Below, piece by piece: positions 16,863 through 55,640 of a stretch of 64,000 nucleotides of DNA. The stretch covers positions 250,790,001-250,854,000 of the forward strand of contig NC_091473.1 in NCBI RefSeq assembly GCF_036971445.1. The letters are read 5' to 3'. Source of the DNA: Narcine bancroftii. Its lineage: Eukaryota. Within the stretch, counting starts at the first letter, position 1. The number at the start of each line of letters is the position of its first letter. Both the position numbers and the translations under genes were made by a program. A model generated the notes under the pieces. The model was not told the DNA's origin, made no database searches, and was given only the letters and a program-made list of their open reading frames with translations.

Positions 16863-16902
16863 ATGGACTTTGCATTCCTTTATTTTGTGATCTCCTTCTC
16901 AG
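16863..16902 (+). CDS. Gene 1 exon 1, signal peptide MDFAFLYFVISFS
   Basis: Kozak-like GCAATGG, hydrophobic codons, consensus donor CAG|GTAAGT, phase 1. Confidence 0.85.
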
Positions 16903-19900
16903 GTAAGTGACAACAATTACCCTTCAAGATTGGTAATATTGGTTTTTAGTGGAACTAGGGACAATTAGCAGAGGTGTGCTTGTCTAATTGTAAGTTTGTT
17001 CACATGAGCAGTTGAGTTAAGTGCATGGAAAACCTCACAGTCTCCATGATCGAACCTCTCCAATCTGCTCCTGCCTATGGTTTGCTCATATCTCAATGAA
17101 GGGCTCAGGTTTGAGTGTTGGTTATGTATCTTTATCTTCGCTTTGTGGCCTGTTGAGTTTCTCCGGCATCGTTTTTTTTACTGCTGGGTACATTGTTCCC
17201 ATAGAATCAAATGTATCTAACCGTGGGAACAGAAATATCTCAACCAGCACGTCCTACTCCTCTGGGTGGTTGTAAGAGTCTATTGTACACAAATTAGCTG
17301 CCATTACCACAAACATTGCACTCAAAAATGTTGTAATGGTTGCAAATTGCTTTGTTCGGACGATGATCCAAGCTTTCCTTGCGTCCTTCAGCTTTTGTGC
17401 ATTTCCTAGAACCATAGAACAAAACAGGCTCTTCAGATCTTCTAGTCTGTGTTGAAGTATTATTCTCCCTAGGTCCACAAGTCTGTACCCCAACCATAGC
17501 CCTCCATACCCCACTTCATGATTGAGCCCACATTCAACACTTCAGCTGGCAGCCTGTTCCACACTCCCACTACTCACTGTGTGAAGAGGTTCCCCCTCAT
17601 GTTCCCCCTTTCACCCTTAACCCATGTCCTCTGGTTTGTATTTCACCTACCCTAAGTGGAAAAAAAAGGTCTGTCTAGACCTCTCATAATTTTAAATACC
17701 TCTATCAAATCCCCCCCTCATTCTTCTACACACCAGGGCACAAAATCCTAAACTGTTTAACTTTTTCCTGTAACTTAATTCCTGAAGTCAGGGCAACATC
17801 CCAGTAAATCCTTTTCAAATAATTAAAACCATTTCAAGGACTGACATGTCTCAACGGAGTGGCACAGAATTGCCTGCTCTTAGTTTGTTTTTATCACTTT
17901 CTATTTGTTACTACTCTAACCCAGCCATTCTCAAAAGGCCACACCACATTTAAGTAAAAGCCTGGGTTTCTTTTCCCCTCACTCAACTTAAGTTACAGTG
18001 CCAGTGTTTGTACGTTCTCCCCGTGTCTGCCTGGGATTCCTCCACATGTTCCGGTTTCCCCTGCCATTCAAAACATAGGTTGTAGGTTAACTGGGGCATG
18101 AGCTTGTTGGCTGGAAGGCCTGCTACCGTGCTGTATGGCTGGAATAAAAAAATTAAATTTTTTTAATGTTTTTTTTATGTCATCTGAAGGAGAGAAGTAC
18201 AGAAGAAACCAAAACTTGACTGCTTCACGGGGAAGTGGTCCATTAAACTTTCAGCAATCCAGGGGAGGGGGAGGCACCATAGCCAAAAAAAAAGGTTTCG
18301 AATGGCTGTGGACTGTTCTGAACCATACAATCCGAGATTAAGAACGATTTAGTGATTATGCCAAAAGACGGTGCTAATTGATATTAAGAACTGTGAAATT
18401 ATCTCAAAGCATAGAACATTACTGGCCCCTTTGGCCCTTCTAGTCTGTGCTGAACCATTTTTTTACCTCCTCCCACTGACCTGCATCCGGTCTGTAGCCC
18501 TCAATACCTCTGCTGTCCATGTACCTGTCCAAATTCATCTTAAATGTTAAAATTGAGCCCTCATTCACCACCTCAGCTAGCAGCTCGTTCCACTCTCTCT
18601 GTGAAGAAGTTCCCCCTCATGGACTCTGAAGCCAAATACAATCTGCTGGGGGGTCTCAGCAGGTTGAGCATCATTAGTGGGAGTCTTGATGAAGTCCTCC
18701 AGCCGGAATCAACCATTCATTTCCTCCTGCTGATCGACCTGTTGAGTTCCTTCAGCTGATGGTGAGAACTTCTGAGTCCTTGGATTGGAGGAATGGCAGG
18801 TGATAGGGAGCGTATTTTCAAATTACCTTAAACTCTTTAGTATATGCTCAGATTTTTCTTGTTTAATATAATTTGGCCACTCCATTATGAAGTCTCATTG
18901 AGGGATGAGTATCCCGAAGAATTTCTCCTCTTGTCTGGTTCACTGCTCCCCTCGTTATACCCATTGCTCTCTACTACCCTCTCACCTGTATATCCAACCA
19001 TCAACCTACGCTCCTCCCCCTTCCCTTTCTTCCCTCCTCTCCTCTCCTCCTCCTCCCTCCCACCTCTACTTGTTTTTTCCAAATTCCTGACGAAGGGCTC
19101 AGAGCCAAAACGTTGACTGTCTTTTACTTCCTGCTGGCCTGCTGGATTTCTCCAGCGCGTTTATGTACCGCACCTGTTACAATTATTATATTTTAACATG
19201 TACTTTATCTTTTCACATTGAACAGTTACAAAAGCTGCTCTAAGTGGACCTCTTGAAGTAAATGGATCAGAGGGGCAATCAGTCAATATCACATGTACAT
19301 ATAGTACATTTTATCACCACCTTTTAAAGTACTGGTGCAAAGGCAAAGAGCAGTCAACCTGTACCATTCTAGTGAAGACCCGAGGCACCACAACGTCAAA
19401 TGCTGATGGCAGGATATCAATTACAGCTGATGATACAGCTGGGGAGTTTACAGTCACAATGAAACAGCTGACGTTGAGTGACCAAGGCTGGTATTGGTGT
19501 GCGATTACCACACGGTTCGTCAATCTGCATCATCCTGTAAACCTTAAGGTCATTGAAAGTAAGGTTTCAATCTACTTTTGCCAATTGTTCAGCAGAATTA
19601 CAATTCTATTAAGAAATGAAACTATTCACTGTTGGCATTAATTTCATGCTGCCTTGCATTAAGTTTTAGATCTTTAATATAAATTGATGCATATTTACCT
19701 GCACAGCATTCTTACAGTTGTTTACCTCATACTTAACAGGTCATCGGTCACTTTTGACAGCTCAATCACCAGGAAAGGAAATTGGGTAAAGGAAACATTT
19801 TCTAAATCTGCATTATTGTAGAGATTGAATGATATTTCACACTGTCCAAAGGATTATTATAGATTATTTGATGTTGAGAGAATTATACGTGGTCTCCATT

Positions 19901-21934
19901 CAAAATGTCAACCACCTCTCTGCCTCCACAGGTGCTGCCTGGCCCATTGACCCCCCCTCCCCCCACACCCACCCCCAGCAATTTGCCTTTGGCATAGGTT
20001 TCTCGAATACAGATTTAGAATCAAAAGTGATGTTACATACCACGTAAAAGTGAAAATTATGTGGTGGAAAATCAACAGCTTGTGTTGATGGCCCATGCCC
20101 TGATCTTGTAATTGCAATGTAAAAAATATCAACACTTGTTGACATTAAACCATGAAACTGGCAGAGGTTCATTGGTTTCTGATCATTTGTAGTTTCACTC
20201 AGAAATCCCCAATTTGACTATTGTGTCCTGCAGAGTTTGCTACCTTCCATCCCAACTCCACTACCCTCAAGAGAACTTGGTTAAATTGAGAAAAAAAAAT
20301 ACTTTGTGTATAAGGTGAGGGGAGGAACATTTAAGGGAGACATCAGGGGCAAGTTTTTTTTTTACACAGAGAGTAGTGGGTGCCTGGAAAACATTGCTGG
20401 TACAATAGACTCTTGGACAGGCACATGGATGCAAGAAAAATATAATGGGTGTGAGTTAGATTGTTGAGTAGGTATATATAAGTCAGCACAACATCATGGG
20501 CCAAGGTCCTGTACTGTGCTGTATGTTCCAAAAAAAAACTTTAAAGTAATAAAAAGAGGAGTGATTCCTTTTCTTGTGATACCACTTCTGGTTCTTCAAT
20601 GGCCCTTTTGGGAAGGAAATCTGCCATTCTTAAATAACCATTTAACAATTACAGCATAGAAACAGGCCAGTTTGGCCCTTCTAGTCCATGCTGAACACCT
20701 TCTCCCATCTAGTCCCATTGATCCACACCTGGGCCATGACCTTCCATATGTCTCCCATCCATATACCTATCCAATTTTTCCTAAAGTGTTAAAATCGATC
20801 CTGTATCTATCACTTGGCCAGGAGTTCATTCCACACTCCCACCACCCTCTGAGTGAAGAAATGCCCCCTCGTGTTTCCGCTAAACTTTTATCCCTTCAAT
20901 CTCAATCCATGCCTTATTGGAATCTCCCCCACTCAATGGAAAAAGCCTGACGCTACCTGTCCCCCTCATCTATGTATTGATTTAGAAAACTTTCCTGCCC
21001 CAGCCTAGGTGTTGCTTAGCACTCAATGAAATGGTCCAATTCCTTGCATCCAGTTTGCATGATGATCTGCTGGTTCATGAGATGCAGAAAAAAAACACAG
21101 AGACAGAACAAAGAGGTTAGAATTATGGGCAGCTCGCAAAAGGGTTGGGTAACACCTCACTTGGAGATTTGTTCTCTTTTTCTCAATCAGATATCCCTGA
21201 ATTTGAGTCAAGTGCTGGAGTTTCATCAGTCTGATTCTTGGGCTAAGCGAGATGGCCAAAGTAGATCGGTCCATGTTTCCTGGAAGGATGGTTAGAATAG
21301 ATAATAGGGGACTATTTTCTAGTGGGAGTTTTAAGACAAAAGGCATTCAGTAGTTTCAGGATAAAGCCACCAATAATTTAGAACAGAGGCAAGGACATCT
21401 TTATTTATGCAGGAGATTGTAGACTTCAAGAAAGTTCTAACCCAAGGACCTATGGATGCTCAGTCGATGAGTTAGATAGATATCACCCATCCTTTGTCAT
21501 GACTGGAGCTGCCTACCATAATAGTAATGGTGGACCACCTTCACCAAAAGGACTGCAGTGGTTCATCACCCACCTTATCAAAGGCAATTAAGGTTGGACA
21601 ATAGATGTTGACATTGACAGCAGTACCTTGATCAAGAAGATATTCAATGCTGAGACGATGGATGTTGACAGGGGGATAGGGCAGAAAAATGAATAGGATC
21701 AGTCATGATTTTACTGAATAAGTGGAGCTTATTGGGGTCGCCAAACACCATCTTGCTCTTGTAATCAAGTGAAAATAATGGGTCACACACATTTCTGTAC
21801 ATGGAGTAAGCTCTTCTAATTTTGCCTTTCCTCTCAGGAAAAATAATTCGAAGTACCAAATCATCTGGAGAATTTTACGTTGGAGTTTCCTTGCGATTCT
21901 AGTTGTCTGGGGCATAGTGACCGTAAAAATGTAA
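16863..21934 (+). CDS. Gene 1: CD300/pIgR-like (CMRF35-like) single-IgV receptor, activating type. join(16863-16902,19226-19558,19740-19785,21838-21934), 171 aa
   Basis: Phase-consistent GT-AG assembly gives MDFAFLYFVISFSVTKAALSGPLEVNGSEGQSVNITCTYSTFYHHLLKYWCKGKEQSTCTILVKTRG...DQGWYWCAITTRFVNLHHPVNLKVIESHRSLLTAQSPGKEIGKNNSKYQIIWRILRWSFLAILVVWGIVTVKM*. Confidence 0.82.
17408..17812 (-). mobile_element. CR1 3' fragment in gene 1 intron 1
   Basis: Antisense CR1 text (TTCCACACTCCCACTACTC; TCATAATTTTAAATACCTCTATCAAATC). Confidence 0.75.
18185..18307 (-). mobile_element. Fragment of a second MITE-like family (also about 46862-47058 and 63915-64000 on plus)
   Basis: Shared core TTTATGG(G)CCC..TTCCC.GT.AAG.AGTCAAGTTTT in three places. 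Confidence 0.6.
19226..19558 (+). CDS. Gene 1 exon 2, V-type Ig domain (CD300/pIgR-like)
   Basis: Acceptor TTGAACAG|, donor GAAA|GTAAGG, 333 nt, phase 1-1. Motifs V.ITC.Y, KYWCKG.....C, GRISI, F.V.M..L...DQGWYWC. Confidence 0.95.
19740..19785 (+). CDS. Gene 1 exon 3, short stalk (SHRSLLTAQSPGKEIG)
   Basis: Acceptor TTAACAG|GTCA is identical to that of the gene 2 stalk exon. Donor GG|GTAAAG. Phase 1-2 fits the TM exon. In-frame alternative acceptors at 19707 and 19761. Confidence 0.62.
21838..21934 (+). CDS. Gene 1 exon 4, transmembrane segment with arginines (KNNSKYQIIWRILRWSFLAILVVWGIVTVKM*)
   Basis: Strong acceptor TTTGCCTTTCCTCTCAG|, hydrophobic stretch, TAA at 21932-21934. Donors at 21931 (GTAAGC) and 21949 (GTATGT). 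Confidence 0.82.
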
Positions 21935-22094
21935 GCAAAGAAAGACTGGTATGTTTTTTTTTTAAATTAGTCCTTTCTGTCCACTTAATTTCAATAGTAA
22001 CTACTTCTGGAAGATATTCCTGGAAAACTGCTCCTTGAAACTACTTCTGAAGTGAGAGCAGAACAAACAGTTTAAGGGGTAGTACATTGAGCAC

Positions 22095-22300
22095 AATGCG
22101 GTTACGTTGCTAGCATTCAGGATTGGGGTTGGCATCCCCCAACCTGTAAGGTGTTTGTACATTCTCCTTGTGTCTGCATGGGGGCTCCAATTTCCTCCCA
22201 CCATTCAAAACATACCATGGGTTATAGGTCAATTGGGTGGCACGGGCTCATGGGGTGAAAGGGCTTGTTACCGTGCTGAATGTCTAAAATTAAAATTAAA
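22095..22300 (+). mobile_element. V-SINE (HE1-like)
   Basis: CTGTAAGGTGTTTGTACATTCTCC core and (TAAAAT)n tail. Confidence 0.7.
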
Positions 22301-22764
22301 TCTCAGATGTAAGGATTTGCCAATTAAAGAGTGAAACACGAAAATCTGCAGACACCTGCAATTGAAGTAAAAACATAGAAATACTGGAGAAACTCAGCAA
22401 GTCTCGCAGTGTCCATAGGAGGTAAAGATATATTACCGACGTTTGAGCCCGAGCCCTACTCAAGTTATAATTTGCCAATTTATACCCGCGGATGAAATCG
22501 TAATGAGAATGTTTCTATTGAAACAGTAAAGTTGGTGTCAAAGTTAAATGTACATTCAGTTGTCTGATTCACTCCTTTACAACAACCTCTATGATTCTGT
22601 TTCTGATCTCATCAAGATGAGGGAGCTCCTCGCAGGGAAATAAGGGTCCTTTCCTTCTGTTTTCATCCTGTTGGATGAGCTTGCCTTAGAACAGCTCAGT
22701 ACAGGCCCTTCAGTTCATAATCTTGTGCTGACCTATGTTACCCTGCTTCCCATCAATCCCTTCC

Positions 22765-23595
22765 CAATGGAGCAGCTGAACTTAATGGATGTTTGGAGAA
22801 GGCTTCACTCTAGAGAGAAGGATTATTCCTTCCATTCAAGACAACATGACTCCTACTTGAAGATAGATTACTTTTGGTTGCAGCCCATTTACAGGGCAGG
22901 ATCATGAAATTGAATACAAGGCGACACTTTTATCAGACCACTCACATCTTGTATTAACTATTGATATGCCAGACAAGAAGGCGACGCCTACATATATTGT
23001 TGTTAAAGTGGCCGGATATTTGTAACTTTATTTGGAACCAAATAACAATGTTCTGTGAGACCAACTATAATTCCACTTTTGAGAGCATATTTGAGAGTTC
23101 AAATAATTCACTCTGCCTCTAGAATTAAAAAAGAGTAAACAAGGGAGGTGGAAGAATTGGAAAAGGAGATTATAATTTTGGAAAAGGACCTTCAAGGAGT
23201 GGGCTCTGAGGATAAACGTAGACAGTTAATTAATAAAAGGCTCAAATAATAATACAATATATACGTATAAAATGGAGAAAATTATAACAAGATCTAAACA
23301 GAATGAGAGGAAAGAACCCATAAGGTCCTCTCCTGGCAGTAGAAAGCAGAAGAAGCCTCCAGAACAATAAATGCAATTAAGCAAGACTCGAACAGGATCT
23401 CTTATAAACCAGAGGATATAAATGAAGCTTTCATGCAATTTTATGCTAATTTATATGAATCTCAATCGATAGGGGATTTGAATAAAATTCAGTTTCCTGT
23501 TGCAATTATTGATACTGTTGTTTTTCTTTTTGATTATTCTTCATTTTAACTGCATGCTGATTGAAAATTCTCAAAATAAAATATTTGGAAAAAAT
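22765..23595 (+). mobile_element. L1-clade LINE fragment (endonuclease end, linker, 3' tail; internally deleted)
   Basis: LMDVWRRLHSREKDYSFHS..HDSYLKIDYF followed by LSDHS; AATAAAA and an A-rich end near 23575. Confidence 0.8.
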
Positions 23596-23654
23596 ATATC
23601 TAATCCTTCCCGCCCTCACACCTATAATCCTCTGTTTATTTGGAAAATTGGATC

Positions 23655-25080: not shown

Positions 25081-25162
25081 GGTGAGGGGATCTTTTATCA
25101 TATCGGGCTGCCCTGCAGATCATCTTCACCTTCAGCTCTCTGAAGAACACCCAGCCAACTGA
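25081..25162 (+). CDS. Candidate gene 1 terminal exon (VRGSFIISGCPADHLHLQLSEEHPAN*) or 3' UTR exon
   Basis: Strong acceptor TCTTTGGTTTTGTTTTCCAG|. In frame with the phase-2 donor at 21930/21931. No tyrosine motif. Confidence 0.45.
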
Positions 25163-29120: not shown

Positions 29121-29124
29121 GATT

Positions 29125-33950: not shown

Positions 33951-33996
33951 ATGAAAATGAGTCCTACTCTTCTCCTTTCAATTGCCTTCCTCTCCG
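33951..33996 (+). CDS. Gene 2 exon 1, signal peptide MKMSPTLLLSIAFLS
   Basis: ATG, hydrophobic core, donor CCG|GTAAGA, phase 1; continues VVHA/DITGP. Confidence 0.85.
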
Positions 33997-39900: not shown

Positions 39901-41904
39901 ATAACTGGACCAAGTATGAAAATTGGAACTGTGGCGGATAAAGTGGAAATCATTTGCAAATTCAATAAGTATTTCAGAAATCATGAGAAGTACTGGTGCA
40001 AAGGATACTACCGGAGGAGCTGCGTTATTTTAGTGCAAACTCGTGGCCCCCAGATGAAAACCAGAGATGGCAGAATAACAATCGACGCTAATAATAAAAA
40101 TGGAGAACTTACAATAAAAATGCATAAATTAACAAAAAACGATAGAGGCTGGTATTGGTGTGGAATTGAAAGGCATCATCTTCTGGATCCGTTAAGTCCT
40201 GTGGAACTTAGAGTTCATGAAGGTAAGACACAGATTTACATTCACCAATGCGTATGGCATTCACCTCTTTTGTTCAATAAAATTTAATTTCAATTTTAAT
40301 TTAGACATACAGCGCGGTAACAGGTCCTTTCAGCCCATAAGCTGCCCAATTGCAACAAATTGACCTACAATCCCAGTATGTTTTCGACAGTGGGAGGAAG
40401 CCAGAGCCCTCCGGGAAATCCCACGCAGACACGGGGAGAACACACAGACTCCTTACAGACTGCGCAGGATTCCAACCCCCGTCCCAATCACTGGTGCTGT
40501 GACTAACCGCCACGCGAAATGTGTGGTCAGAAATGGAACCAGGCCATTAATTCTTAGGTCAGAATATCAGGTTACATGCTCACCATCCTGTGGGGTACCT
40601 TGCCTCTGACTCCCCAAAGCCTCGCCACAAGGTTCAAAGCAGGAGTGCGATGGAAACATCTTCACTTGCCCGGTGGCATTCAGCTCTGCTCTCATTAGGC
40701 AAACTGTTTTGGCAATCATTGAAAATAAAAAAAACTTCAGATCTGCTGATGCCGGCAAATCTTAAATATAATCAGAAATGATGGCAACACTCAGCAGGCA
40801 AGTTAGCATCCGCGGAAAGAGAAATCATTTCAGTTTGAAGACCAGTTGTCAAATTGGAAAAGTGAGAAAGCAAGGTAGTTTTATGTTGCAGAGGATGGGG
40901 GAGGACGGGAAGGATAAAGAAAATACCTGTATCTCTGATGGGGTGAGGCCAGGATTGTCATATTGATATGCCATTCATTGCGCCATCTGGTGGTTAGAAT
41001 AATAAAGACAGTTGGAGCATGGGAAAACAAATAATGGCATCTTCCTCTCCATCTGCTCTTATTCACAGTAGAAGATAGGCTCTAATCCAACACAAAACGC
41101 GTGAAACACTTAGCAAGTCGGGCAGTATCTGCGCAAAGAGAAACAGAGTTAATTTTCAAATCGATGAGCCTCTGTCGGAACTGGGGAAGTGAGAAAACCA
41201 GTTCGTCGGGACCCTTAGGTTGCAGAGAGGGTGGGGTGAGCTGGGGAGGGCAAAGGAAAATCTGTGAGATGGTGAGGCCAGGATTGCCAAAGTGATGTGC
41301 TCTTCAGGAAATTCTCTGAGTGACAAAATGGAAAGGAGGGAAAAGCAACGAGAGTCAGAGAAAAAAAAATCTCCAAAATTCACAGAGTTAGATGTCCCTC
41401 TCTTTATTTTTTCCCCATCAGAATGTTTTCTTTTATTAGAGTCACAGGCTGGACCAAATCTGTACACAGCATCCATGAATAACCATATTACATTTTTAAC
41501 AGGTCAGAAGTTACTTCCTTCAGACAAAGAAAGACTAAGGTAAACATCAACTGTCTTGTGATAGACTAGTACAAATATAACGTCTCTACCATATTATTCT
41601 AACTGGTTAAAAAGGTGTTACTGAGGCCATTCAGTCCAGTGGTTCTATGCACTTGCCCGCATTTAGAACAGTTTAGCACAGAGTGGATTTGCAGAGCAGA
41701 CTCGATGGGCTGAATGGCCTACTTCTGTTCCATTATCTTGTGGTTAATTTCATATTCCTATGCCTCGTTTATTCATATTTGATCAGAGGCCTTTCAAACA
41801 TTGTTACTGTCCCTCCCTCCCTCATCTCCTCTGGCAGCTTATTCAAGGTATAGTATATAAATATGGTATAATATATTTACCCCTCATCTCCTCTTGCAAC
41901 CTAT

Positions 41905-41957
<53 letters not shown>

Positions 41958-44900: not shown

Positions 44901-47900
44901 AGTGAAACCATCATTGTACAAATTTGTTATATGACCTTTCCTGTTTGACCCTGCTCTCACCGGCCAGTTTGTGACTTTCTTTCCCATAAAGGCTATCATG
45001 CCACAAGCCTGCCCCCAGTTTGAATCCAGGACAGTGTAAGTGACCAACACAGGGATGCTGTCCATCTTTTGCAAATAAAAGCCTTCAGTTTCAATTACTT
45101 CAGTCTTTGCACAATTGATTGTGCATCAATCACTTCACAGTTATCCAGATTGAACTCTATCTGCTACTTCTCCATCCAACTCTGCATCCTGTGTAACCTA
45201 CCGACAACCGTCTATATTATTCACAACACCTCCAATCTTTGTGTCATGCGTAACCTAACTGACTCACCCCCCTCCTCTTCTTAGTCCAAGTCATTTATTA
45301 ACATCACAAAGAGCAGGGGTCCCAGAACAGATGCCTACAGAATGCCTTTAGTCACTGACCTCCAGGGAGAATATGCTCTTGTCTTTCCAGGGTTAACTAC
45401 GACAGAGATTCACACAAACCCCTATTTTAATATTCCGTCAAGGCTCCTGATTAACCAGCAGCTGAGAAGAGGAAATTTACCCCCCAGTACTCCGACGGCA
45501 ATTTCATTCCATTCACCCCCAGTAAATGCGATGTCCATGCCTGCCCATAAATCATTAATGTGCCAAATTTTGGGTAACTTTCTGCTATTCACCTGCGTAA
45601 CATTGACTTGCTTAAGATGGGTTAACCCAAACCTTTAAGGTGAAACAGAAGAAATCTTGACCATATCATTTGAGTTTAGCTTCAGAGTTTTCAGAATTCA
45701 AAGAACGTTTTTCAAAGTAACCACCTTCAGCGTTTGGCCGAATTTGCATCCAAATATAACGTTATCATAAATGTGAGTATGAGCTAAAACAAGGACGTTC
45801 AATTGATAAGATGGTTATGGTTTTGTGATGTCACTGTTAGATCTAATCATAATATTACAGCCAGGAGTGAAACACAAAAGTTTGCAGACACTGCAGAAAT
45901 GCTGCGAGACCTGTTGAGTTCCTCCAGCATTTCTGTGTTTTCACATAGTTTTACCACCATGAAGGTTCTGTGCTAACGTCAGGGTGTGTCAGCTGACACG
46001 AAATTATCCAAATGGTTAACCGATTAAGAAATAAGAAAAACCACTGGGTTCCGGCAGAATCTGGGGAACAAGGAAGGGACTGGCTTTCATGGTTCTTGAG
46101 TCATGGTCCTTCTGCTAACAGGTGATGGGTAAAAAGGAGCGTCGAGTGTTAAAATAATTCTCGCCATAGTGATGCAGATGTCCCAGTGGATAAAACCATA
46201 AGACATGGGAGCAGAAATAGGCCATTCAGCCCATCAAGTCTTCCCCGCCATTTAATCATGAGCTAATCCATTTTCCCACTCAGCCCCACTGCCCAGCCTT
46301 CTCCCCATAACAGTGACTCTTTATCAGAGCGTCGTTGAACATTAAACTAATGTCGTTGCATTACTAACCCCATGTCATATTGGTTGCCTGGATTTAATGC
46401 ATGCAAAATCATCTCCAGCTTTCAGTTGTAGTTCCAAGTGCAGAATATAACAGGATGTTAGCAAGTGTGACTTGTTACTTGCTAACATCCCATTATATTC
46501 TGCACTGGGAAAACTCCATGTTATGGGACATAATTAGATAATTCCTCATCATATCGTTCGTGGACACATTTAGCTGATATACCTCTGTTTCTACCTGATC
46601 TTGATGATTCTTCTTTCTCTTTTTCATGAACCACCAAGATTTTTCGTAATACTTGGACTAGTCTTTGGAATATTAACAATGATGTCTCTTGGTCTCCTGG
46701 TCCTAGTTATCAAAAAAATTAGAAAGCACAGAAATAAAGGTAAGTTCAGAAGTGAACACACATTTTGTGAAGTAAGGTTAATCCTTGTTTCTAAGAAGCA
46801 ACTAACTAAATGATATGAAACAATCTTACATGTTTTTTGTCTCATTTGCTATGATTTAAATCAGCGATTGTCAGCCTCTATTTTCAGCTATGGCTCAAGG
46901 TTTATGGGCCCTCTTCCCTGTAAAGAAGTCAAGTTTTTGCTTCTTCTGTACTCCTCTCCCACCGACTACATACAAAAATGAAGTGAAAAGAAAAATGTGC
47001 GGTCACCCCCGGGAGGGAGGGGGTGGAGAGCATAGGGCCCCCATTGAGAAATGCATCTGTATTTGAGAACTGTATGCACATTGTTAGGCAAAAATAAAAA
47101 TCTCCTCATATTTTTATTTCAATAACCTTATATTTTTCATTTCATTCTACGAATGAGTCTCAATAAAGGAGTCAGCCAAATGCAATGGAACCTCCTTTAT
47201 CTCTTTGGAAGAATAGGAGTTCTGTTGTTCTGACCATTCAGAACAACATAATGGTGACAGGGTTGCCAATAACATTGCGACAACTTGTATGTGGCACAAA
47301 GCAACGTGCATTGTTTCTTGCTCATGGGTTTAAAATATTTGGAAGTCATGTTAGCAACACAAAGGTGATTTTTATTTGTTAATTAAAAGCGCTGCCTGTC
47401 ACCAGTTTGCCAGAGTCAAGGCCATCCTCCTGTTTGGTACTGTGGAAAGAAATGAAACAATTATATTTCCTTGAACAATTCTCAACACACCAGATGAATG
47501 AGTTAGTAACTATTCAGTAAGTCTTTTGTGAATAAGTATGCACTATTTAATTACCTGCTAAATAATCTTGGAACATAGAATATACAACTCTACAGCACAC
47601 TACAGGCCCTTCGGCCCTTGATGTTGTGCCATCTTGTATTCCTACCAAAAAATGTAGCACTAAACCCTTCCTACCCCATAACCCTCTATTTTTCTTTCAT
47701 CCATGTACCTGTCTAAGAGTCTCTTAAATGCCCCGAATGATTCAGCCTCCATCACCATGCCTGGAAAAGTGTTCCAGACACCCACAACTGCCTGTGTAAA
47801 AAAACTTATCCCTGATGCGTCCCTTAAACGTTCCTCCCTTCACTTTGTAGAGATGACCTTGGTATTTGGGATTCCTGCCCTGGGATAAAGGCACTGGCTG

Positions 47901-50900
47901 TCCACCCTGCCTAGGCCTCTCAGGTCTCCTCTCATCCTTCTTCAGTCCAAAGAGATCTTGTTGAATTTCTTGTAAATTAAATTTGTTGTCAATCTTTTAG
48001 GAGTTAGTTCCCTTTACATTTTCTTGGTTTGAGTTGTAGGATACTTAGTTAAGGCAAAGGGAAAATTATTCCAAAATTCCAATGAGGCCAATATCCCCAA
48101 GGTACAGTGAAGCTTTTTATATTCTGTATGAAATTTGTTCTGAGCTAAACAGCCCAATCTATTTAGACACCAAACCATATTAAATAAATATTGAGAAGCA
48201 CACCTAATCCTGCCCAATTAATGTGATTCACCTCATTCACATCTCACCAAAATGATTGGGTGTCCTTCATCGAAAAAAGATCTACTGTCTTGGGAAACGG
48301 CCCAGGAGGTTCACCAGGTTGATTCCAGAAATGAAGATGTTATCTATGAGGAGAGATTGAGTCGCCTGAGACTATATTCATTGCAGTTTAGATGGGAGGT
48401 GGGGGGCAAGGGGTTGGGGCTTCTGATAGAGGCATATATAAAAGGAGCAGGTAAGATAGAAATAGGGAAGCTTCCACTGGCTAGTGAGACTGGAACTAGG
48501 GGACAAAGCTCAAGATTTGGCAGAGTAGGTTTAAGTCAGAGATAAGGAGGAACTGCTTCTCCTAAAGAGCAGTGAATCTGTGGAATTCTGGAACTCTCTG
48601 CCTAAGGAAGTATTGGCTGCATTTAAGGCAAAGATGGAGGATTAAGGTTATGGGGAACAAGCATGGAACTGAGTGCTGACCTTAATGAATGGCCAACTCC
48701 TGCTTCTACCTCTTAACTTCTTAAGTTTTTAAATCTTTTTAAAATGTAAATTTAAATGTTTTAAATTTAAATTTGGACATACAGAATACAGCACAGTATT
48801 TCAGCCCACGAGTCTATGGCGTCCAATTTACACCCAATTAACCTGCACCCCCAGTAGATTTTGAACGGTGGGACAAAACCAGAGTTCCCGCGAAAGTCCA
48901 TGCAGACACCAGAAGAACGTACAAACTCCTCATGGACAGTGTGGGATTCAAACTCCCAGAGCCGATCGCTAGCACTGTTAAGACATTGCCCCAACTGTGC
49001 CGTCCGTGTTGCTAACCGTCCTTGTAACGATTCTTGACCTGGCTCAACTTTGAGTGTCAGCCTTTGCGTTTAATTATTCACAGGTCTGATTGAACCTGGG
49101 GAAGGCTGCAAAGTGGAATTTAAAGAGAAGCAGGAAGTTGAAGAGCAAGGATCAGGTGAGTGGACCAAAATTCGAGCAAGAACTGGAAAATCTCAAGGGA
49201 TATTTTAATCTGTGGTGACATCTACTGAAATGAAGGGGAGATAGAACAGGAAAATAGCCATGGGAAAATGGATCTGCAAAATGAAAGTTCAGCCCAAGAT
49301 TCGTCTCCCTGTGTGTGATTGCAAGTCAACAATAAATTATTGAAATTCAAACTGGAAGGCAAACATGAAAGTAGACATGAAGTGAATTAAAGATTAGAGA
49401 ATAAATGTGCAACCCAAAACCACAGCAAAAATCTTTCACCTTCAGAGATCGCAGATGTCAGAAATGTGAATTTTCCGGTTGTCTGAGACTCACTCTTACA
49501 CTGTCTAACTAATACACCGCATTAAGAATACACTGTTCAAAAGACAAAAGACAGTGCAAAATGTAAAGTAATTTGGAAAAAAATTCCTTCATCCTTAATT
49601 AGGTAAAGTTCGCTTTAATCAAGTAATTCCCGTATCCTAGAAAAGTTCAATTCAAATTCAAACCCAGGTTGCTGGTCTAGTAACAGTGTTGCATTAGCCA
49701 CTACACGAACCATGCCACCGTCAAAATGAACCCCTCCCCCAAGTTTACATAAAGCCTTACTAATATACTTAATACAATAAAGATTAAGAATCTTACTCGG
49801 CAGGGATAGGGAGACATTTTGGGAGAGTCACCGTAGCATCCGCCAGCTCTTCATCCCGGGTGCCGCCATTTTATTCAAACACAACTTTATTCAAACAGCT
49901 GCTGAGGGCAGGGCATGACCGGGGCCCTCTACTGGCTGAATGTTGTGTGTTCCTTCAGAGAACACTTAAAAATTTAAGCTTTTATTTAAAACCTTATTTA
50001 TTTTTAAATGGTTTATTTCTTTCTTTCTTTTTTTTGCCGGTTGAGTTTCTGGTTGACTGACTGGCAGATAATGGGGACATTACTGTATCAAAACAGTTGG
50101 ATGCGAAAAGAATATTTCCATTGAGAAGTGGACCCGTATTTTTCATAACCACAAGTTATCTCAAAGCATTTGACAAAAAATTGATAATTGTTGAAATGTT
50201 ATCATAATGATAATTAAAGAAAAATGGCAACCCATATGAGAATAGCAAATGGAAATGACCACATCACTGGTGACATTGCACAACGATATTGGGCGTAACT
50301 CTGCCATTCTTCAGAATGGTGCCTTGGGGATCCTTTTTGTCCATCTGCACAAATCATACCCCAAAGCATTTCTTCTAATAGGCAGTGTAGCCTCAGCCTA
50401 GAACATGGAATGGTCACAACAGCAAATGAGGGAATTTGCCCCATCATATTTGCACCATCTCTCAACCATTACAAATTCCTAGTTCCACATCACTCCCTTT
50501 CTCTATAACCTTGTCAATCCTTATTCACCAAAATATTTATCCAATCCCCTCTTGTAGACCACAATGGAACTGATGTCCTCCACAACACCTGGCAATGCAG
50601 TCTAGATTCTAACCGCACACTGCATAACAAAGCCTTTTCTCTTCCATTTTATTTTAGTCCTTGACCATTCCACCTACAACAGCAGTCTCCCACTTTCTCC
50701 AGACCCCTCTTTATTTCATGTATTGTAATTTGATCAAATCTCCCCTCAGTCTCTCTTCTCCAAACAAACTATTCCCAGTCCCTCAAAACTATACTGAGAC
50801 CCAAATCCCACTCATAAATCTCCTCTGGATTCTCCTTGGAGCCAACCAATGAGACATTCCTATTCAGTCCTATTTTATATCCATGATAAACTCTGTGTGA

Positions 50901-53900
50901 TATCTTACAGGCATACAAAAAGGCATTTAGCAATAACCTGACCAGAACCCAAATATGAAAATAATTGTACAATTCAATTCACAGTTGATGGAAACTGAGC
51001 TAAGCAACAGTATCAGAATATAAATATATTGTGATTTAAGTTTACACATATTAATTGGCTTAAGTTTGCCTAACAATACATATCTCTGTTTAATATGAAT
51101 GGCTTTGATACAAACATTTACTGCCAGCAATGGCACACAATGGTTGAAATGTTGTCTGCAAAGACTAGTTCATAATTTTTGTGAAAATTGACACCATATA
51201 TAACCATTACCAAATAACAATTACAGAACAGAAACAGGCAATCTCGGCACCTCTAGTCTGCACTGATATGTGAGCTCCACTAGTCCCACCTACCTGCTCC
51301 CTGCCCATAGCCCTCCAATCCTCTCACATCCATGCACCCATCCAACCTTCTCTTAATTGGCAAAATTGACCCTGCTGCAGCCACCTCTTCCAGAAGGTCA
51401 TTCCACTCAGCCACCACTCTCTGAGTGAAGAAGCTCCCTCTCATGTTATTGCTAAACTTTTGCCCCCAACCCTTAACTTATGACGCCTCGTTCCAATCTC
51501 ACCTCCCCTCAAGGGGAAGAGCCTATTCACATCTACTCTATCTGTCCCCCTCATAATTTTAAATACCTCTATCAAATCCCCCCTCAACCTTCTATGCTCC
51601 AATGAATAAAGACCCAGACTGCTCAGCTTTTCCATTAATATTTAAGTGTGCACATTAAAAAGCAGTAAATTTTAGAAATTGCATATGTCAGAACTCGAAA
51701 ATAATTGTTTCCAGTTGGCCTTATGTATTGCTTTTCCCTTTATGTTTTAGACACCCAGGAGAGGGAGCCAACATTAGAGAATTCTATTCCTAAATCGAAC
51801 TCCACGGTAAGGCTGCAAACTCTGGTTCTTTTAAGTGCTACGATATCATTTAAAGGATGCTTTGCAATGGTGCTCTTTGTACACATCCATGATATCTCCG
51901 TCAACAATTTTTATGAATCTACTGCCATCAAAGTAGTAAAGCAATCTCTTGTCACTTTTCAGCGGGGGTAATCACATCTTTACATCGAACTGCAGGATAC
52001 GTTAGGTCACGTGGTCAAAAGCTGACTGACTGTTTCTTATCTTGAGAGGGTGCCTCCTGGTTCTTCAGTAGGAGGAGACAGCCTCTTAGCCCCCTCGCAA
52101 CCTTGCATGTCTCTGTAAGTGGGCCGCAGTGGCATAGCCGATGGAGCTGCTGTCTCACTCCCCCAGCTAACTCCTGGAACTGTCCATGTGGAGTCTGCAT
52201 ATACTCCCTGTGTAGCTTCCCCCAGCTGCTCTGCTCCTGCACCCCAAAGACGTTCATGTTTCTCACCATTAGAAACAATTCTGCTTTGCCGCCAGTTCCC
52301 TGGGCACAATTTGTGCACCTTGTCCTCAATCTGCTTGCTTCCTGTCCATTCACTTAACCCTTTGGACTCCTTGTCCTGTTTTTCAGGGGCTACCAACAAG
52401 CGCATATACTCTGCGTGCCTGTTTGCCAGGATTCATTTTATAACTGGCCAGCTGGTTTGCACTGGTGTTGGTAAAGCTTTACCCATGGATCCAGTCCAGA
52501 TTATATATTATGAAAGGTTAAAAATGGCCAGAGGCCAGAGTTAACCTGTCTGCGCCTGTCCGCAGAAGTTTTGACCCTTCTCGTCCTTCTGCCACTCCCC
52601 TGATTTGCTGCAACTGCTCACTTTACACTTCCACTGAGTTCATCTGTGTAAATCATAGCCACTCACGACCTGCGGTGCCTGAGTGGTGACAATCTACCTC
52701 CATTCCTCCCTCCTCTCTCTACCTGTCACCCATCCATCCTGATGCGTTAACCCTAATCCAATCAGCTCCTTAATAATTTATGTAATGTGGGAGGAATTCT
52801 CACACCAATGTCATTCCTGCTCTCAGGGGCATGAAAGCATGCGCTTGAACTTTGTCCCTACTATTTTTTTTGCCTCCGTAAATGTTGCTTGAACACAGCC
52901 CAATCCCATTTCTTCAACGTCAAGATCATTCCTCACCACTGCCTTGTATCATCCTAAATTTTATCAATTGACCATTCCTCCTTAAATAACTTCTCTTTCT
53001 CTCTCTCTCCCGCTGCAATTTTCCGACAGCAACGTTTCTACCTTCAATTTAATCTTTTCTTCCTCCACATTCTTGCACTCACACAAAAACTTGGGTAATT
53101 TCAATCCCACAATGCAATTACCCGTTTCATATTTGCCTGATCGCAGCGCCGGCGCCTGCAGACACCGGGGATTGTACTAAGGGTCAAGACCGTCAAACCC
53201 CGGTGTGATGACGTTATCTGACGCCAGCGTTGAGCTGATTTTGCTTTCACGCTTGGCACTTTAAAGGCCGATTGGCGGTTAATTCCTGGGACCACTTGCA
53301 AGCATGAAAGGAGCTTTTATTTATTGCTGCGGAACTCTTCTGTCACTGCCAGTTGCACTCTTATCCATGCTTTTAAATGTTCTTACAAGATAGAAGGAGG
53401 CCATTTCAGCCCATCAAGTTTATGCCAGCCTACAGAGTAATCCTACTGAGTCAAGTTTACAGTCACATGTATTGGGGTACAGTGAGAAAGTTTGTTTTGC
53501 AAGTGATCCAGCTACTCAACTCACGCATGGAACAGCAGTTGAATGACAATACTGAAAGCAAAGTTACAGAGAGGTCGGTTAGATTATGAATGTAAGATTT
53601 GTTCAGGAGACTGATAACGGTGGGGAAGAAAATGCAAAAGATTGCAACAACTTGCAACGTTAGTTATCTCCAGCTCACTGTCCAATGCATGTTGTAAAAA
53701 CACACAGTTCTGGAGAGACTCAGCAAGTCAAACAGTGTCCTTGATGTAGCCAAGGCAGAGATAGAGAACTGATGTTTCGGGCTTGAGCCCTTTGTCAAAG
53801 TATGAGAAAATGCTGGTGAGCGTCAAAATGAAAGAATGGAGGTGGAAGGCAGGAGATGATAGTTGGAGAAGGGAGGGAGGGGACAGCAGCACTGGGTGGA

Positions 53901-55640
53901 GAGGGGGGAGGGCTGTGTAGGTGAAGGAACTGGAAAGGTTTAACTTATGCCTAATGCAAGTTACTGCATCAGCAGTTTTTGAATTGCCCCCTGAACTTTT
54001 CCTTTAAACCAAAAACTTTGCCCTTACACGATACCCACTTCCTGCCAGCCCTCGTACAATTGTCCGTGCTTCACTAAAAAGAAATGCAAGAACACAGATA
54101 AACCCATTTTGACGTTTAAGCCATGTGGGTTAGGGATAAAGTGTTGGCCAGGTCATTGATGAGCGCTCTCCGTCTCTTTTTCAATTTAGAACCATGGGAT
54201 TCTTATGCCCATTTGAGAATGGAAGGAGTTTTCAGTTTAACACTTGTGACTTTTAGACTTTTACCCTGCCTTGAAGTTTCTCATCTGTCACAGAAGTACA
54301 CCTATTCCCCAGAATTTAGGTGCTGGGCTTTGAAGCTGGTTTTGAAGCTAATATACTTGAGGTTGCATCCAAGATATGAAAATGCTGTACTTTTATAAAT
54401 CAATGATGTACTTTTATATAAAACTAACTCTGGTTCTGCCAGTTTTGTTCTTCCTGTGAACCCAACAGTCGAGCTGGAACTATTTGTATTTTGTTTTCTG
54501 AAGAGGAATTTGTTGATTAATCCAAGTTTGAGGTTGAGTTCTCACATTACAGTAAAAAAAAACCCTGGCATCCTGCACCTGTGGGTATTTGTAGATGCCA
54601 GATAAGTGAATTTTCCGGTTGCTTGAGATAGTGTGTTGTGCGATTGGTGATCTAACGGCAAGGCGCACAAATTTTATACTCCCGTATTTTTGACTTCTCT
54701 ATTTTCCGCGATTGTCTTACTGGCTTCTTGAGGATGCTAGCTACTTAAATTCTGGATAAGAAGGGTTTTACTGTACAGTATATATCTTACAATATAGAAG
54801 GAGGTCAGTTAGCCCGTCAGCTTAACCTCATCTCTGCCATTCCCTTCATTTTCTCATCAGCCCTACCAAGATTCTTCCACCATCCTGAGGAATTTGAAAA
54901 TTTTATTTAATTTCACACATGCATTAAAAAAAATCTTATACATAAATTTCTTCTTCAAAAGTATTAAAATTAATACATAGTGATTTTTAAAAAATTCCTC
55001 CACACCCCCCCCCCAACAGCCCGATAGGAAAGAAGGAATAAAATGAAAAAAAGAAGAGAACATCTGGATAATATTTATAAAAATTTACTAAAACTATCAA
55101 ATAAAATCTAGCATATCATCCTGAGGAATTTGAGTTGGAATGTCAGGTATTCTCTGACGTTCCAAAGACATGCCAATTAAATGTACCATGTGGCATGTCT
55201 TTGGAATGTCAGAGAATACCAGAAGAAACTTATACAGTCATTGGGAAACCATACACACTGCACAGGACAGCACTAGAGGTTAAGGTCCATAGAGCTGTGA
55301 AACAACAGCATTGCTAATTCTGAGATCCAATTCCCTATTTAGAATATCTTGAAAAGTTTTTTTTTTCCCTGCTGCAAGAAATCTTCTATATTTTCATTTT
55401 GATAACTTTACTGATGAACTAACCCATTGCCTCATTCTCGGTCTTCAGTTGTCCAAAGAGAAGGAAGCAGGAGTGACTTACGCCAGCGTGATGATTCAGC
55501 CCGGTGACAACCCACAGGAAGACTCTTGCATGTATGCTAATGTGAACCCTTCCAACAGTCAGGACAAGAACAAGCCTCCAATTACTGACCCTCCAACTTC
55601 GGAACCAATAGAGTATTCTACAATTGCATTCAAAAAGTAA
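33951..55640 (+). CDS. Gene 2: CD300-like (CMRF35-like) single-IgV inhibitory receptor. join(33951-33996,39887-40222,41503-41539,46639-46739,[49084-49155],51751-51806,55449-55640), 255 or 279 aa
   Basis: All junctions are GT-AG and phase-matched (1,1,2,1,[1],0). Signal peptide, IgV, short stalk, uncharged TM, basic stop-transfer KKIRKHRNK, tail with VTYASV, MYANV and IEYSTI. Confidence 0.9.
34996..35287 (+). mobile_element. Solo LTR
   Basis: Ends TGTGGTG...CACCACA, perfect 5-bp TSD AATGT, internal GATATAAG and ATTAAA. Confidence 0.88.
35890..36330 (-). mobile_element. CR1 3' fragment
   Basis: GAATTCCACAGATTCACCACTCTCTG and TTCATAATTTTATA (antisense CR1). Confidence 0.7.
36545..36916 (-). 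mobile_element. Composite hAT element, inverted relative to the 15068 copy
   Basis: Same two units and spacer, reverse-complemented; TSD ATGTAGAT/ATGCAGAT. Confidence 0.88.
38300..39645. mobile_element. Cluster of V-SINEs (about 38300-38515 minus, 38645-38880 minus, 38960-39180 plus, 39480-39645 minus)
   Basis: Repeated V-domain core (GGGAGAAC.TGCAAACTC.TTACAGAC or its complement). Confidence 0.75.
39318..39400. repeat. Two-copy tandem duplication of about 42 bp
   Basis: AGATGGTCCCTTGCCCAAT...GCCCAGAGTGCCAAA occurs twice. Confidence 0.85.
39887..40222 (+). CDS. Gene 2 exon 2, V-type Ig domain (CD300/pIgR-like)
   Basis: Acceptor TTTTCACACTTGCAG|, donor GAAG|GTAAGA, 336 nt. VEIICKF, EKYWCKGYYRRSC, DGRITI, DRGWYWCGIE. 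Confidence 0.96.
40300..40515 (-). mobile_element. V-SINE (HE1-like)
   Basis: CCCACGCAGACACGGGGAGAACACACAGACTCCTTACAGAC core. Confidence 0.8.
41503..41539 (+). CDS. Gene 2 exon 3, short stalk (GQKLLPSDKERLR)
   Basis: TTTTTAACAG| and AG|GTAAAC; 37 nt; bridges phase 1 to phase 2 as the TM exon requires. Confidence 0.75.
41906..41954. repeat. (CT)n microsatellite
   Basis: About 24 CT units. Confidence 0.97.
43232..43648. mobile_element. Probable Tc1/mariner-type MITE
   Basis: TACCATATAT..CGTGTAATT and ATTACACAAGGAAATATAGTA form imperfect TA-flanked ends around a GC-rich core. Confidence 0.45.
44188..45375 (-). mobile_element. CR1 fragment split by a solo LTR
   Basis: Antisense CR1 ORF2 text on both sides of 44898-45128. 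Confidence 0.75.
44898..45128 (+). mobile_element. Solo LTR inserted in CR1
   Basis: TG...CA ends, 5-bp TSD ATCTC/ATCAC, CATAAA and AATAAA (45074). The CR1 sequence rejoins when it is removed. Confidence 0.7.
46432..46511. repeat. Inverted repeat/hairpin of about 80 nt
   Basis: AGTGCAGAATATAACAGGATGTTAGCAAGT pairs with ACTTGCTAACATCCCATTATATTCTGCACT (28/30). Confidence 0.9.
46639..46739 (+). CDS. Gene 2 exon 4, transmembrane (FFVILGLVFGILTMMSLGLLVLVI KKIRKHRNK)
   Basis: Pyrimidine tract then CAAG|; donor AAG|GTAAGT; 24 uncharged residues followed by a basic cluster. Confidence 0.92.
47570..47955 (-). mobile_element. CR1 3' fragment
   Basis: ACAGGCCCTTCGGCCC tail motif and antisense ORF2 end. 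Confidence 0.75.
48265..48720 (+). mobile_element. CR1 3' fragment
   Basis: YEERLSRLRLYSL; GTGAATCTGTGGAATTC. Confidence 0.75.
48775..49020 (-). mobile_element. V-SINE (HE1-like)
   Basis: AGAACGTACAAACTCCT core with matching head and tail. Confidence 0.75.
49084..49155 (+). CDS. Gene 2 candidate cytoplasmic exon (GLIEPGEGCKVEFKEKQEVEEQGS), symmetric phase 1
   Basis: TTTAATTATTCACAG| and CAG|GTGAGT; 72 nt; open in the required frame; purine-rich. Confidence 0.6.
51200..51630 (-). mobile_element. CR1 3' fragment
   Basis: LGLYSLEHRRLRGDLIEVFKIM. Confidence 0.88.
51751..51806 (+). CDS. Gene 2 cytoplasmic exon (DTQEREPTLENSIPKSNST)
   Basis: TTTTCCCTTTATGTTTTAG| and ACG|GTAAGG; 56 nt; phase 1 to 0. 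Confidence 0.85.
54898..55116 (-). mobile_element. Short L1-like 3' end insertion with 17-bp TSD
   Basis: CATCCTGAGGAATTTGA at 54881-54897 and 55117-55133; TTTATT at the left end. Confidence 0.8.
55449..55640 (+). CDS. Gene 2 terminal exon with ITIM-type motifs
   Basis: CTCGGTCTTCAG| phase 0; LSKEKEAGVTYASVMIQ...CMYANVNP...EPIEYSTIAFKK*. Confidence 0.93.
   Translation: MSKEKEAGVTYASVMIQPGDNPQEDSCMYANVNPSNSQDKNKPPITDPPTSEPIEYSTIAFKK

What the first reader, a model, noticed from the sequence alone, without database searches (positions are those of the whole stretch)
16863..55640. Candidate activating/inhibitory CD300-like receptor pair in a cartilaginous fish
Seen: two tandem same-strand genes with the same exon plan (leader phase 1, IgV 1-1, tiny stalk 1-2 with identical TTAACAG|GTCA acceptor, TM) and the extra KYWC-x7-C cysteine pair. 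Gene 1 has TM arginines and no tail tyrosine; gene 2 has a neutral TM and ITIM-type motifs. Established: this IgV signature marks CD300/pIgR/TREM relatives, the two layouts define activating and inhibitory receptors, and related MDIR genes are known from skate. My hand alignment gives only about 40 percent IgV identity, so the duplication is old and the ligands may differ. Both lack the long mucin-like stalk common in mammalian CD300s. Most exons are missing from the ORF track.
Basis: partly seen in the sequence, partly recalled or inferred. Interest (0 to 1): 0.85.

Follow-up and report, generated by a model that had tools for sequence, protein, structure and literature searches.

The report
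Electric-ray CD300-like on/off receptor genes
Two neighbouring genes of the lesser electric ray encode small one-domain immune receptors of the CD300/MDIR kind, one built like an "on" switch and one like an "off" switch. Both are real and gene 1 is shown to be transcribed, but both are already in RefSeq and belong to a family long known from skates.

Summary
The window is from Narcine bancroftii.

**Gene 1** (16863-25162, + strand) is RefSeq "CMRF35-like molecule 5". It has a leader, one IgV domain, a 46-nt stalk exon and a TM exon (..IIWRILRWSFLAILVVWGIVTVKM). Spliced RNA contigs from three runs of one study join these exons with no mismatch. One donor keeps the stop codon (171 aa). The other removes it and adds 26 residues from an exon at 25081 (197 aa). 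Neither tail has a tyrosine.

**Gene 2** (33951-55640, alternative end at 60935) is RefSeq "CMRF35-like molecule 1". It has seven exons, including 72-nt and 56-nt cytoplasmic exons that the finding does not list. Its TM is neutral. VTYASV and IEYSTI are invariant in nine shark and ray orthologues; CMYANV is not.

The two IgV domains are 40% identical. In trees they share one chondrichthyan clade, and the gene 2 lineage holds both sharks and rays, so the duplication predates that split. Only the second TM arginine (ILRW) is conserved.

The activating/inhibitory reading is supported by sequence, not by function. Novelty is low: the scan already filed a neighbouring pair in this cluster under skate MDIRs.

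The parts
16790..16902 (+). Gene 1 exon 1: 5' UTR plus leader (ATG 16863, MDFAFLYFVISFS, phase 1, donor GTAAGT)
   Evidence: Sequence read. RNA contigs start at 16790/16797/16805 and join to the IgV exon. Identical to P0001/P0004.
19226..19558 (+). Gene 1 exon 2: IgV domain (333 nt, phase 1-1) with KYWC-x7-C and WYWC
   Evidence: RNA contig pieces cover 19223-19558 with 0 mismatches.
19740..19785 (+). Gene 1 exon 3: 46-nt stalk exon (SHRSLLTAQSPGKEIG, phase 1-2), acceptor TTAACAG|GTCA
   Evidence: In all three RNA contigs 45 unlaid nt lie between the IgV and TM pieces, which is 46 nt minus 1 ambiguous base. The residues are present in P0001.
21838..21948 (+). Gene 1 exon 4: TM exon (KNNSKYQIIWRILRWSFLAILVVWGIVTVKM). 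It has two donors. Donor 21930|GTAAGC removes the TAA at 21932-21934 and gives the 197-aa form. Donor 21948|GTATGT keeps the TAA and gives the 171-aa form.
   Evidence: Sequence read. Contig pieces end at 21931 in runs X2 and X3 and at 21949 in run X1, each with about 530 nt continuing outside the laid stretch. RefSeq isoforms are P0004 and P0001.
25081..25162 (+). Gene 1 exon 5, coding part (VRGSFIISGCPADHLHLQLSEEHPAN, stop TGA 25160-25162). The 3' UTR is inferred to run to about 25610.
   Evidence: The P0004 tail maps here exactly. The acceptor is ttttccag|G. The exon starts with G, as the 1-nt overhang of the contig pieces predicts.
33951..33996 (+). Gene 2 exon 1: leader (MKMSPTLLLSIAFLS, phase 1, donor GTAAGA)
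   Evidence: 100% match to P0157.
39887..40222 (+). Gene 2 exon 2: IgV domain (336 nt, phase 1-1)
41503..41539 (+). Gene 2 exon 3: 37-nt stalk exon (GQKLLPSDKERL, phase 1-2), acceptor TTAACAG|GTCA
46639..46739 (+). Gene 2 exon 4: neutral TM plus basic stop-transfer segment (RFFVILGLVFGILTMMSLGLLVLVIKKIRKHRNK, phase 2-1)
49084..49155 (+). Gene 2 exon 5: 72-nt cytoplasmic cassette exon (GLIEPGEGCKVEFKEKQEVEEQGS, phase 1-1). It is skipped in the Pristis and Mobula short isoforms and absent from the 253-aa shark proteins.
51751..51806 (+). Gene 2 exon 6: 56-nt cytoplasmic exon (DTQEREPTLENSIPKSNST, phase 1-0)
55449..55640 (+). Gene 2 exon 7: tail with VTYASV (ITIM), CMYANV (ITIM-like) and IEYSTI (ITIM). 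Stop TAA at 55638-55640. An alternative donor lies at 55636|GTAAAA.
60893..60935 (+). Gene 2 alternative last exon (adds KSDLMYPKFNTMH, RefSeq isoform X1, 292 aa). It lies outside the finding's coordinates.

Best explanation
These are two separate, same-strand paralogous genes of the CD300 / pIgR-like / MDIR receptor family in Narcine bancroftii. Each encodes a type I membrane protein with one IgV domain on a very short stalk.

**Gene 1.** Shown: the gene structure and its transcription. It has a membrane-embedded arginine, conserved as W-x-I/V-L-R-W in rays, a shark and a chimaera-like transcript. Its tail has no tyrosine, in either the 3-residue or the 29-residue form. Inferred: the arginine pairs with the acidic TM residue of an ITAM adaptor. 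Because the arginine sits in the outer third of the helix, an FcR-gamma/CD3-zeta type adaptor is more likely than DAP12. Ligand binding would then signal through Syk-type kinases.

**Gene 2.** Shown: the gene structure and the motif conservation. It has a neutral TM and a roughly 105-residue tail with two invariant ITIM-type tyrosines (VTYA-S/T/A-V and E-Y-S-T-I/V). Inferred: after Src-family phosphorylation these tyrosines recruit SHP-1/SHP-2-type phosphatases and damp signalling.

**Origin.** The two IgV domains come from one duplication that predates the shark/ray split. The 3' ends (TM plus tail) are unrelated. One copy therefore swapped its signalling module, as expected in a modular receptor cluster.
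For: **Gene models.** Exon-by-exon reading with canonical splice sites and matching phases. The models are identical to RefSeq proteins P0001/P0004 and P0157/P0168.

**Transcription of gene 1.** Spliced contigs from three runs of one study match with 0 mismatches. They support both C-terminal isoforms.

**Family.** Pfam V-set. PDB matches to CD300f, CD300a, CD300c and pIgR D1.

**Polarity.** In six gene-1-type proteins the TM positions W150, L153, R154, W155, F157, I160, L161 and W164 are invariant, and the other five end right after the TM. In nine gene-2-type proteins VTYA.V and EYST are invariant.

**Age.** The gene 2 clade holds sharks and rays (100/98 and 100/97). Gene 1 lies outside it but inside a common clade of 13 rows (97/88).

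**Modular TM.** The same TM motif occurs in multi-Ig pIgR-like proteins whose IgV domains sit in other clades.
Against: - No functional or binding data exist. No adaptor (FcR-gamma, DAP12) or phosphatase of this species was examined.
- Gene 2 transcription was not checked here, because the single read-laying run went to gene 1. It rests on the RefSeq models and on an orthologous skate transcript (P0022, from Logan).
- The first TM arginine is specific to Narcine.
- The gene-1-type clade has only moderate support (83/74).
- All three tail tyrosines also fit Y-x-x-hydrophobic endocytosis signals.
- At 40% identity the ectodomains need not share a ligand.
Confidence: 0.8

Rival explanations
1. 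Gene 1 is a non-signalling or decoy receptor. It would be a membrane-anchored IgV that competes for ligand, is shed, or partners with a protein other than an ITAM adaptor. Its TM arginine would serve another role, such as retention or oligomerisation.
For: No adaptor was examined. The tail is essentially absent. The added 26-residue tail is not seen in the orthologues.
Against: The LRW arginine and the surrounding TM residues are invariant from a chimaera-like transcript to rays, while the ectodomain is only 43-58% identical. That pattern is expected of an adaptor-docking helix. The same motif recurs in other cluster members. By established knowledge, a buried basic residue normally requires an acidic partner for surface expression.
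Confidence: 0.12
2. Gene 2 is not purely inhibitory. Like mammalian CD300f (recalled from memory), its tyrosines could act as a dual switch (ITIM/ITSM, Grb2 or PI3K docking) or mainly as endocytosis signals.
For: Sharks have T-E-Y-S-T-V, which fits the ITSM consensus T-x-Y-x-x-V/I. All three tyrosines are also Y-x-x-hydrophobic. The shark orthologue gives a sub-threshold Pfam match to the SHP2-interacting adaptor SIT (E 3.5e-4, 21.5 bits against a cutoff of 27.6).
Against: Two invariant canonical ITIM-type motifs are the dominant conserved feature of the tail. No YxxM or ITAM spacing is present (read from the sequences).
Confidence: 0.15
3. The two IgV exons belong to one multi-domain pIgR-like gene.
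For: Multi-Ig pIgR-like genes exist in the same family and on the same chromosome.
Against: RNA contigs carry leader, IgV1, stalk, TM and a 3' exon, with no second Ig. A TM exon and a stop lie between the two IgV exons. Gene 2 has its own leader, which matches its orthologues. RefSeq models them as two genes.
Confidence: 0.01

Closest known systems
Mammalian CD300 (CMRF35-like) family, especially CD300f/CLM-1 (inhibitory) and the short-tailed activating members
   Same: Both have a single V-set domain with the extra KYWC...C cysteine pair. CD300 members are the best solved single-domain matches (CLM-1 at E 7e-18 and 3e-17). The family splits in the same way into ITIM-tailed members and short-tailed members with a charged TM. 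RefSeq names the two genes CLM-5 and CLM-1.
   Different: The stalk is very short (about 13-23 residues) instead of a Ser/Thr/Pro-rich stalk. The activating member uses an N-proximal arginine in a W-x-x-L-R-W motif; activating CD300 members as I recall them use Lys or Glu, which was not tested here. One-to-one orthology is not resolved: the tetrapod sequences fall in an open polytomy. Synteny was not tested.
Skate MDIRs (modular domain immune-type receptors; Cannon et al. 2006, cited in PMC3031540)
   Same: Both are a cartilaginous-fish multigene family of activating and inhibitory receptors with CD300/TREM/pIgR-like V domains. The TM module is shared between genes with unrelated IgV clades. 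The scan's follow-up on the neighbouring pair filed that pair under MDIR.
   Different: No direct comparison with the Raja eglanteria MDIR sequences could be made: the sequences were not obtainable here and the paper is not held. This pair is single-Ig and is conserved one-to-one across sharks and rays rather than being species-specific.
Polymeric immunoglobulin receptor (pIgR) and fish pIgR-like proteins
   Same: The IgV domains resemble pIgR D1 and D4, at 57 and 54 bits per domain. They share the cysteine pattern.
   Different: There is one Ig domain rather than two to five. The tails are signalling-type or absent. In the tree the domains separate from the chondrichthyan multi-domain pIgR-like proteins.

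Membership tests
CD300 / CMRF35-like receptors | Single extracellular V-set Ig domain | tested here: met
   Pfam V-set at E 1.6e-22 and 8.7e-12. There is one Ig exon per gene and only two in the window.
CD300 / CMRF35-like receptors | Second intradomain cysteine pair (KYWC-x7-C) shared with pIgR D1 | tested here: met
   The cysteines align with those of pIgR D1 in the phmmer alignment. They are invariant in both orthologue sets. Actual disulfide formation was not tested.
CD300 / CMRF35-like receptors | Closest solved relatives are CD300 IgV domains | tested here: met
   CLM-1/CD300f scores 67.7 and 65.9 bits. CD300c and CD300a score 54-62 bits, NKp44 30-40 bits, and TREM2 about 30 bits (found for IgV1 only).
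CD300 / CMRF35-like receptors | Activating members: charged TM residue plus a short tail without tyrosine motifs | tested here: met
   Gene 1 has a conserved R154 in its TM. Its tail is KM or KM plus 26 residues with no tyrosine.
CD300 / CMRF35-like receptors | Inhibitory members: ITIMs in a long tail | tested here: met
   Gene 2 has VTYASV and IEYSTI, invariant in nine species.
CD300 / CMRF35-like receptors | Orthology or synteny with the mammalian CD300 cluster | tested here: inconclusive
   The tree leaves tetrapod CD300 sequences and this clade in an open polytomy.
CD300 / CMRF35-like receptors | Adaptor (DAP12/FcR-gamma) or SHP-1 recruitment; lipid ligands | not testable with these tools
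   Needs biochemistry.
MDIR (skate modular domain immune-type receptors) | Cartilaginous-fish genes with CD300/TREM/pIgR-like V domains in activating and inhibitory forms | tested here: met
   The family description is taken from PMC3031540.
MDIR (skate modular domain immune-type receptors) | Sequence clustering with Raja eglanteria MDIR1-5 | not tested
   The MDIR sequences were not among the named hits, and the primary paper is not held.
pIgR | Two or more tandem Ig domains and a transcytosis-type tail | tested here: not met
   Each gene has one Ig exon, shown by transcripts and RefSeq models.
TREM / NKp44 | Closest similarity to TREM/NKp44 V domains and a central TM lysine | tested here: not met
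   E-values are 1e-6 to 1e-9, against 1e-17 for CD300. The TM has an N-proximal arginine, not a lysine.

The most novel reading that the evidence does not exclude
This is not a fast-turnover lineage-specific pair. It would be an activating/inhibitory duplicate that has been kept as two orthologous lineages since before sharks and rays diverged, possibly since the chondrichthyan ancestor. It would have been created by swapping a modular TM exon. That exon's W-x-x-L-R-W-x-x-F helix also occurs in multi-Ig cluster members and in a catfish CD300-like protein. It would then be an ancient, pre-tetrapod adaptor-docking module for CD300-type receptors.
Probability: 0.35. Interest if true: 0.4.

Novelty: new member of a known kind. 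Interest (0 to 1): 0.22.

Why it matters
The pair gives two concrete, transcript-supported receptors for studying how innate paired-receptor signalling worked in the oldest jawed vertebrates. It also offers a conserved TM motif that could be used to find the adaptor partner in elasmobranchs.

It does not open a new question. The gene models are already in RefSeq under CD300-type names. Activating and inhibitory CD300/pIgR-like receptors (MDIRs) have been known from skates since 2006.

Tried and rejected
No neighbour or synteny check in Narcine or other species was possible.
- **Whole-protein word search with P0001** found only itself and one Mobula protein.
- **PDB search with gene 2's tail exon** gave no hit even at E 10. 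The claimed likeness to the mammalian CD300f tail therefore rests on memory and is not tested.
- **Pfam on the TM and tail exons** gave only sub-threshold noise: UL2, RHEX, and SIT at 21.5 bits for the shark orthologue.
- **MDIR literature:** the primary paper (PMC3701310) and the Cannon 2010 review (PMC2823954) are not held. Searches for CD300 in sharks found nothing specific.
- **Hydropathy scan:** a candidate at 20540 was dropped as gene 1's TM in favour of 21838, which fits the phase and the RNA.
- **Self-joined spliced models** were never sent to a search tool. Exons were searched by reference, and full-length comparisons used proteins returned by the tools.
Full report
**What is there.** The window has no N runs. 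In six-frame translation only two exons carry the KYWC / WYWC immunoglobulin signature, both on the + strand. Reading the DNA around them gives two genes with canonical GT-AG introns and matching phases.

**Gene 1 structure.**
- Leader 16863-16902: MDFAFLYFVISFS, donor GTAAGT, phase 1.
- IgV 19226-19558: 333 nt.
- Stalk 19740-19785: 46 nt.
- TM exon from 21838: KNNSKYQIIWRILRWSFLAILVVWGIVTVKM, then TAA at 21932-21934.

**Gene 2 structure.**
- Leader 33951-33996.
- IgV 39887-40222.
- Stalk 41503-41539.
- TM 46639-46739.
- Two small cytoplasmic exons, 49084-49155 and 51751-51806.
- Tail exon 55449-55640.

The acceptor string TTAACAGGTCA occurs exactly twice in the window, at the two stalk exons, against 0.09 expected by chance. 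The two IgV domains are 40% identical (44/109). Both are V-set domains by Pfam.

**Identity of the genes.** A protein search with the gene 1 IgV exon returned a 171-aa protein that is 100% identical: 'CMRF35-like molecule 5 isoform X2 [Narcine bancroftii]'. Its sequence equals my exon model residue for residue. Its cluster also holds isoform X1, 197 aa.

For gene 2, an exhaustive HMMER search with its IgV exon gave a 277-aa representative at 68% identity. Searching with that protein returned 'CMRF35-like molecule 1 isoform X2 [Narcine bancroftii]', 279 aa. This protein maps at 100% to the seven exons listed above. Isoform X1 (292 aa) skips the TAA through the donor 55636|GTAAAA and ends in an exon at 60893-60935.

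So both genes are already modelled in RefSeq, on a 257.7-Mb chromosome record. I did not send any self-joined spliced model to a search tool. Exons were searched by reference, and full-length work used proteins that the tools returned.

**RNA evidence (gene 1).** Three runs of one study, coded organism A, hold contigs of 1133, 1109 and 1101 nt. Each lies on 16790/97/05-16899, 19223-19558 and 21837-21931 (21949 in run X1), with no mismatch. Each has 45 unlaid bases between the IgV and TM pieces. That is the 46-nt stalk exon minus one ambiguous base. The 3-nt and 1-nt offsets at the junctions are bases shared by exon end and intron end.

This shows gene 1 is transcribed and spliced as predicted. 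IgV1 is followed directly by its own stalk and TM exons.

About 530 nt of each contig lie outside the laid stretch, so the TM exon is not terminal.
- In runs X2 and X3 the piece stops at 21931. This corresponds to the donor AAAAT|GTAAGC, which removes the TAA.
- In run X1 the piece stops at 21949. This corresponds to the donor ACTG|GTATGT, which keeps the TAA.

The extra 26 residues of RefSeq isoform X1 map exactly to an exon at 25081-25162 behind the acceptor ttttccag. That exon begins with G, as the one-base overhangs require.

The added tail, VRGSFIISGCPADHLHLQLSEEHPAN, has no tyrosine.

**Family.** Against all PDB sequences, the best single-domain relatives of both IgV exons are CD300 members. 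CLM-1/CD300f gives E 7e-18 and 3e-17, followed by CD300c and CD300a. The individual domains of pIgR score 57 and 54 bits for D1 and D4. NKp44 and TREM2 are far weaker. The extra cysteine pair aligns with that of pIgR D1.

**Polarity and conservation.** Gene-1-type proteins were found in:
- Mobula hypostoma and Hemitrygon akajei;
- the shark Mustelus asterias (P0075);
- a Logan transcript that groups with Callorhinchus (P0104).

All end two to four residues after the TM. W150, L153, R154, W155, F157, I160, L161 and W164 are invariant, while overall identity is only 43-58%. The first arginine (R151) is S or N elsewhere, so only one 'TM arginine' is conserved.

Gene-2-type proteins were found in Rhinoraja, Pristis, Mobula, Heptranchias, Carcharodon, Rhincodon and Chiloscyllium, plus a Logan skate transcript. 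All keep a neutral TM and the invariant V-T-Y-A-x-V and E-Y-S-T motifs. The middle tyrosine (CMYANV) is lost in three of the nine. The 72-nt exon is present only in ray and skate long forms.

**History.** IgV trees place gene 2 in a clade of sharks and rays (100/98 and 100/97). Gene 1 falls with Mustelus, Mobula and Hemitrygon (83/74). Both, together with the chimaera sequences, form a clade of 13 rows (97/88) that excludes the multi-domain chondrichthyan pIgR-like proteins and the tetrapod CD300 and pIgR-like sequences sampled. The duplication therefore predates the shark/ray split. Its relation to individual mammalian CD300 genes stays unresolved.

The TM motif of gene 1 (W-x-I/V-L/G-R-W-x-x-F) also occurs in multi-Ig pIgR-like proteins of Leucoraja, Hemitrygon and Narcine, and in a catfish CLM-7 whose IgV domains lie elsewhere in the tree. 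Gene 2's TM is unrelated. The signalling end thus behaves as a swappable module, which is what gave skate MDIRs their name (family description from PMC3031540).

**Mechanism (inferred).** These steps rest on established knowledge of paired immune receptors.
- A basic residue buried in the outer third of a TM helix pairs with the aspartate of an ITAM adaptor dimer. The N-proximal arginine position is typical of FcR-gamma/CD3-zeta partners rather than DAP12.
- ITIMs, once phosphorylated, recruit SHP-1, SHP-2 or SHIP.

Nothing here tests these steps.

**Context and novelty.** Earlier notes of this scan report further CD300/pIgR-like genes 8.6 kb upstream and 123 kb downstream. A follow-up already filed the upstream pair under MDIR. 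I did not verify those notes. The rest of the window is transposon debris.

The finding is correct but ordinary. It describes two RefSeq-annotated members of a known receptor family. The modest additions are the onward splicing of gene 1, the missed exons of gene 2, the deep conservation of both lineages, and the modular TM motif.

Noticed in passing
window 21929-21936 and 55634-55642: In both genes the TAA stop codon overlaps an alternative GTAA donor (AAAAT|GTAAGC and AAAAA|GTAAAA). Splicing there removes the stop and adds a short alternative C-terminus from an exon 3.1 kb (gene 1) or 5.3 kb (gene 2) downstream.
   Followed up: partly
window 24648-24940: A perfect 32-nt tandem array (9.2 copies, 100% matches) lies in gene 1's last intron, about 140 nt upstream of the terminal exon. 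On the minus strand it creates long repetitive ORFs that are not genes.
   Followed up: partly
P0069, P0076, P0103, P0133, P0165 (not in window): The TM motif W-x-[IV]-[LG]-R-W-x-x-F of gene 1 recurs in multi-Ig 'pIgR-like' proteins of Leucoraja, Hemitrygon and Narcine and in a catfish CLM-7. Their IgV domains belong to other clades. This suggests a shared, shuffled TM exon.
   Followed up: partly
P0006 (Stegostoma tigrinum 'pIgR-like', 638 aa): Its first Ig domain nests inside the gene 2 clade next to Rhincodon, and the protein contains VTYASV and EYSTV. It may be a merged gene model joining a gene-2 orthologue to a neighbour.
   Followed up: no
window 3140-6236 (+), 7315-7794 (-), 10394-11148 (+), 28000-31340 (+), 59658-60470 (-), 62328-63431 (-): These are retroelement remains: gypsy-type protease/RT/integrase ORFs and several LINE reverse-transcriptase fragments. 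Apart from the two receptor genes they account for the long ORFs listed in the window.
   Followed up: no
window 17388-18766, 20146-20933, 22116-22500: SINE/TE-like pieces in gene 1's introns attract thousands of RNA contigs at 90-95% identity, with summed depths up to about 120,000. These are repeat families expressed elsewhere, not intron retention.
   Followed up: no
P0094 (unnamed 358-aa representative): Its tail has the same order of motifs as gene 2 (PTYTTV ... IYANM ... VEYSVLAF). The three-tyrosine tail layout may therefore extend beyond elasmobranchs.
   Followed up: no
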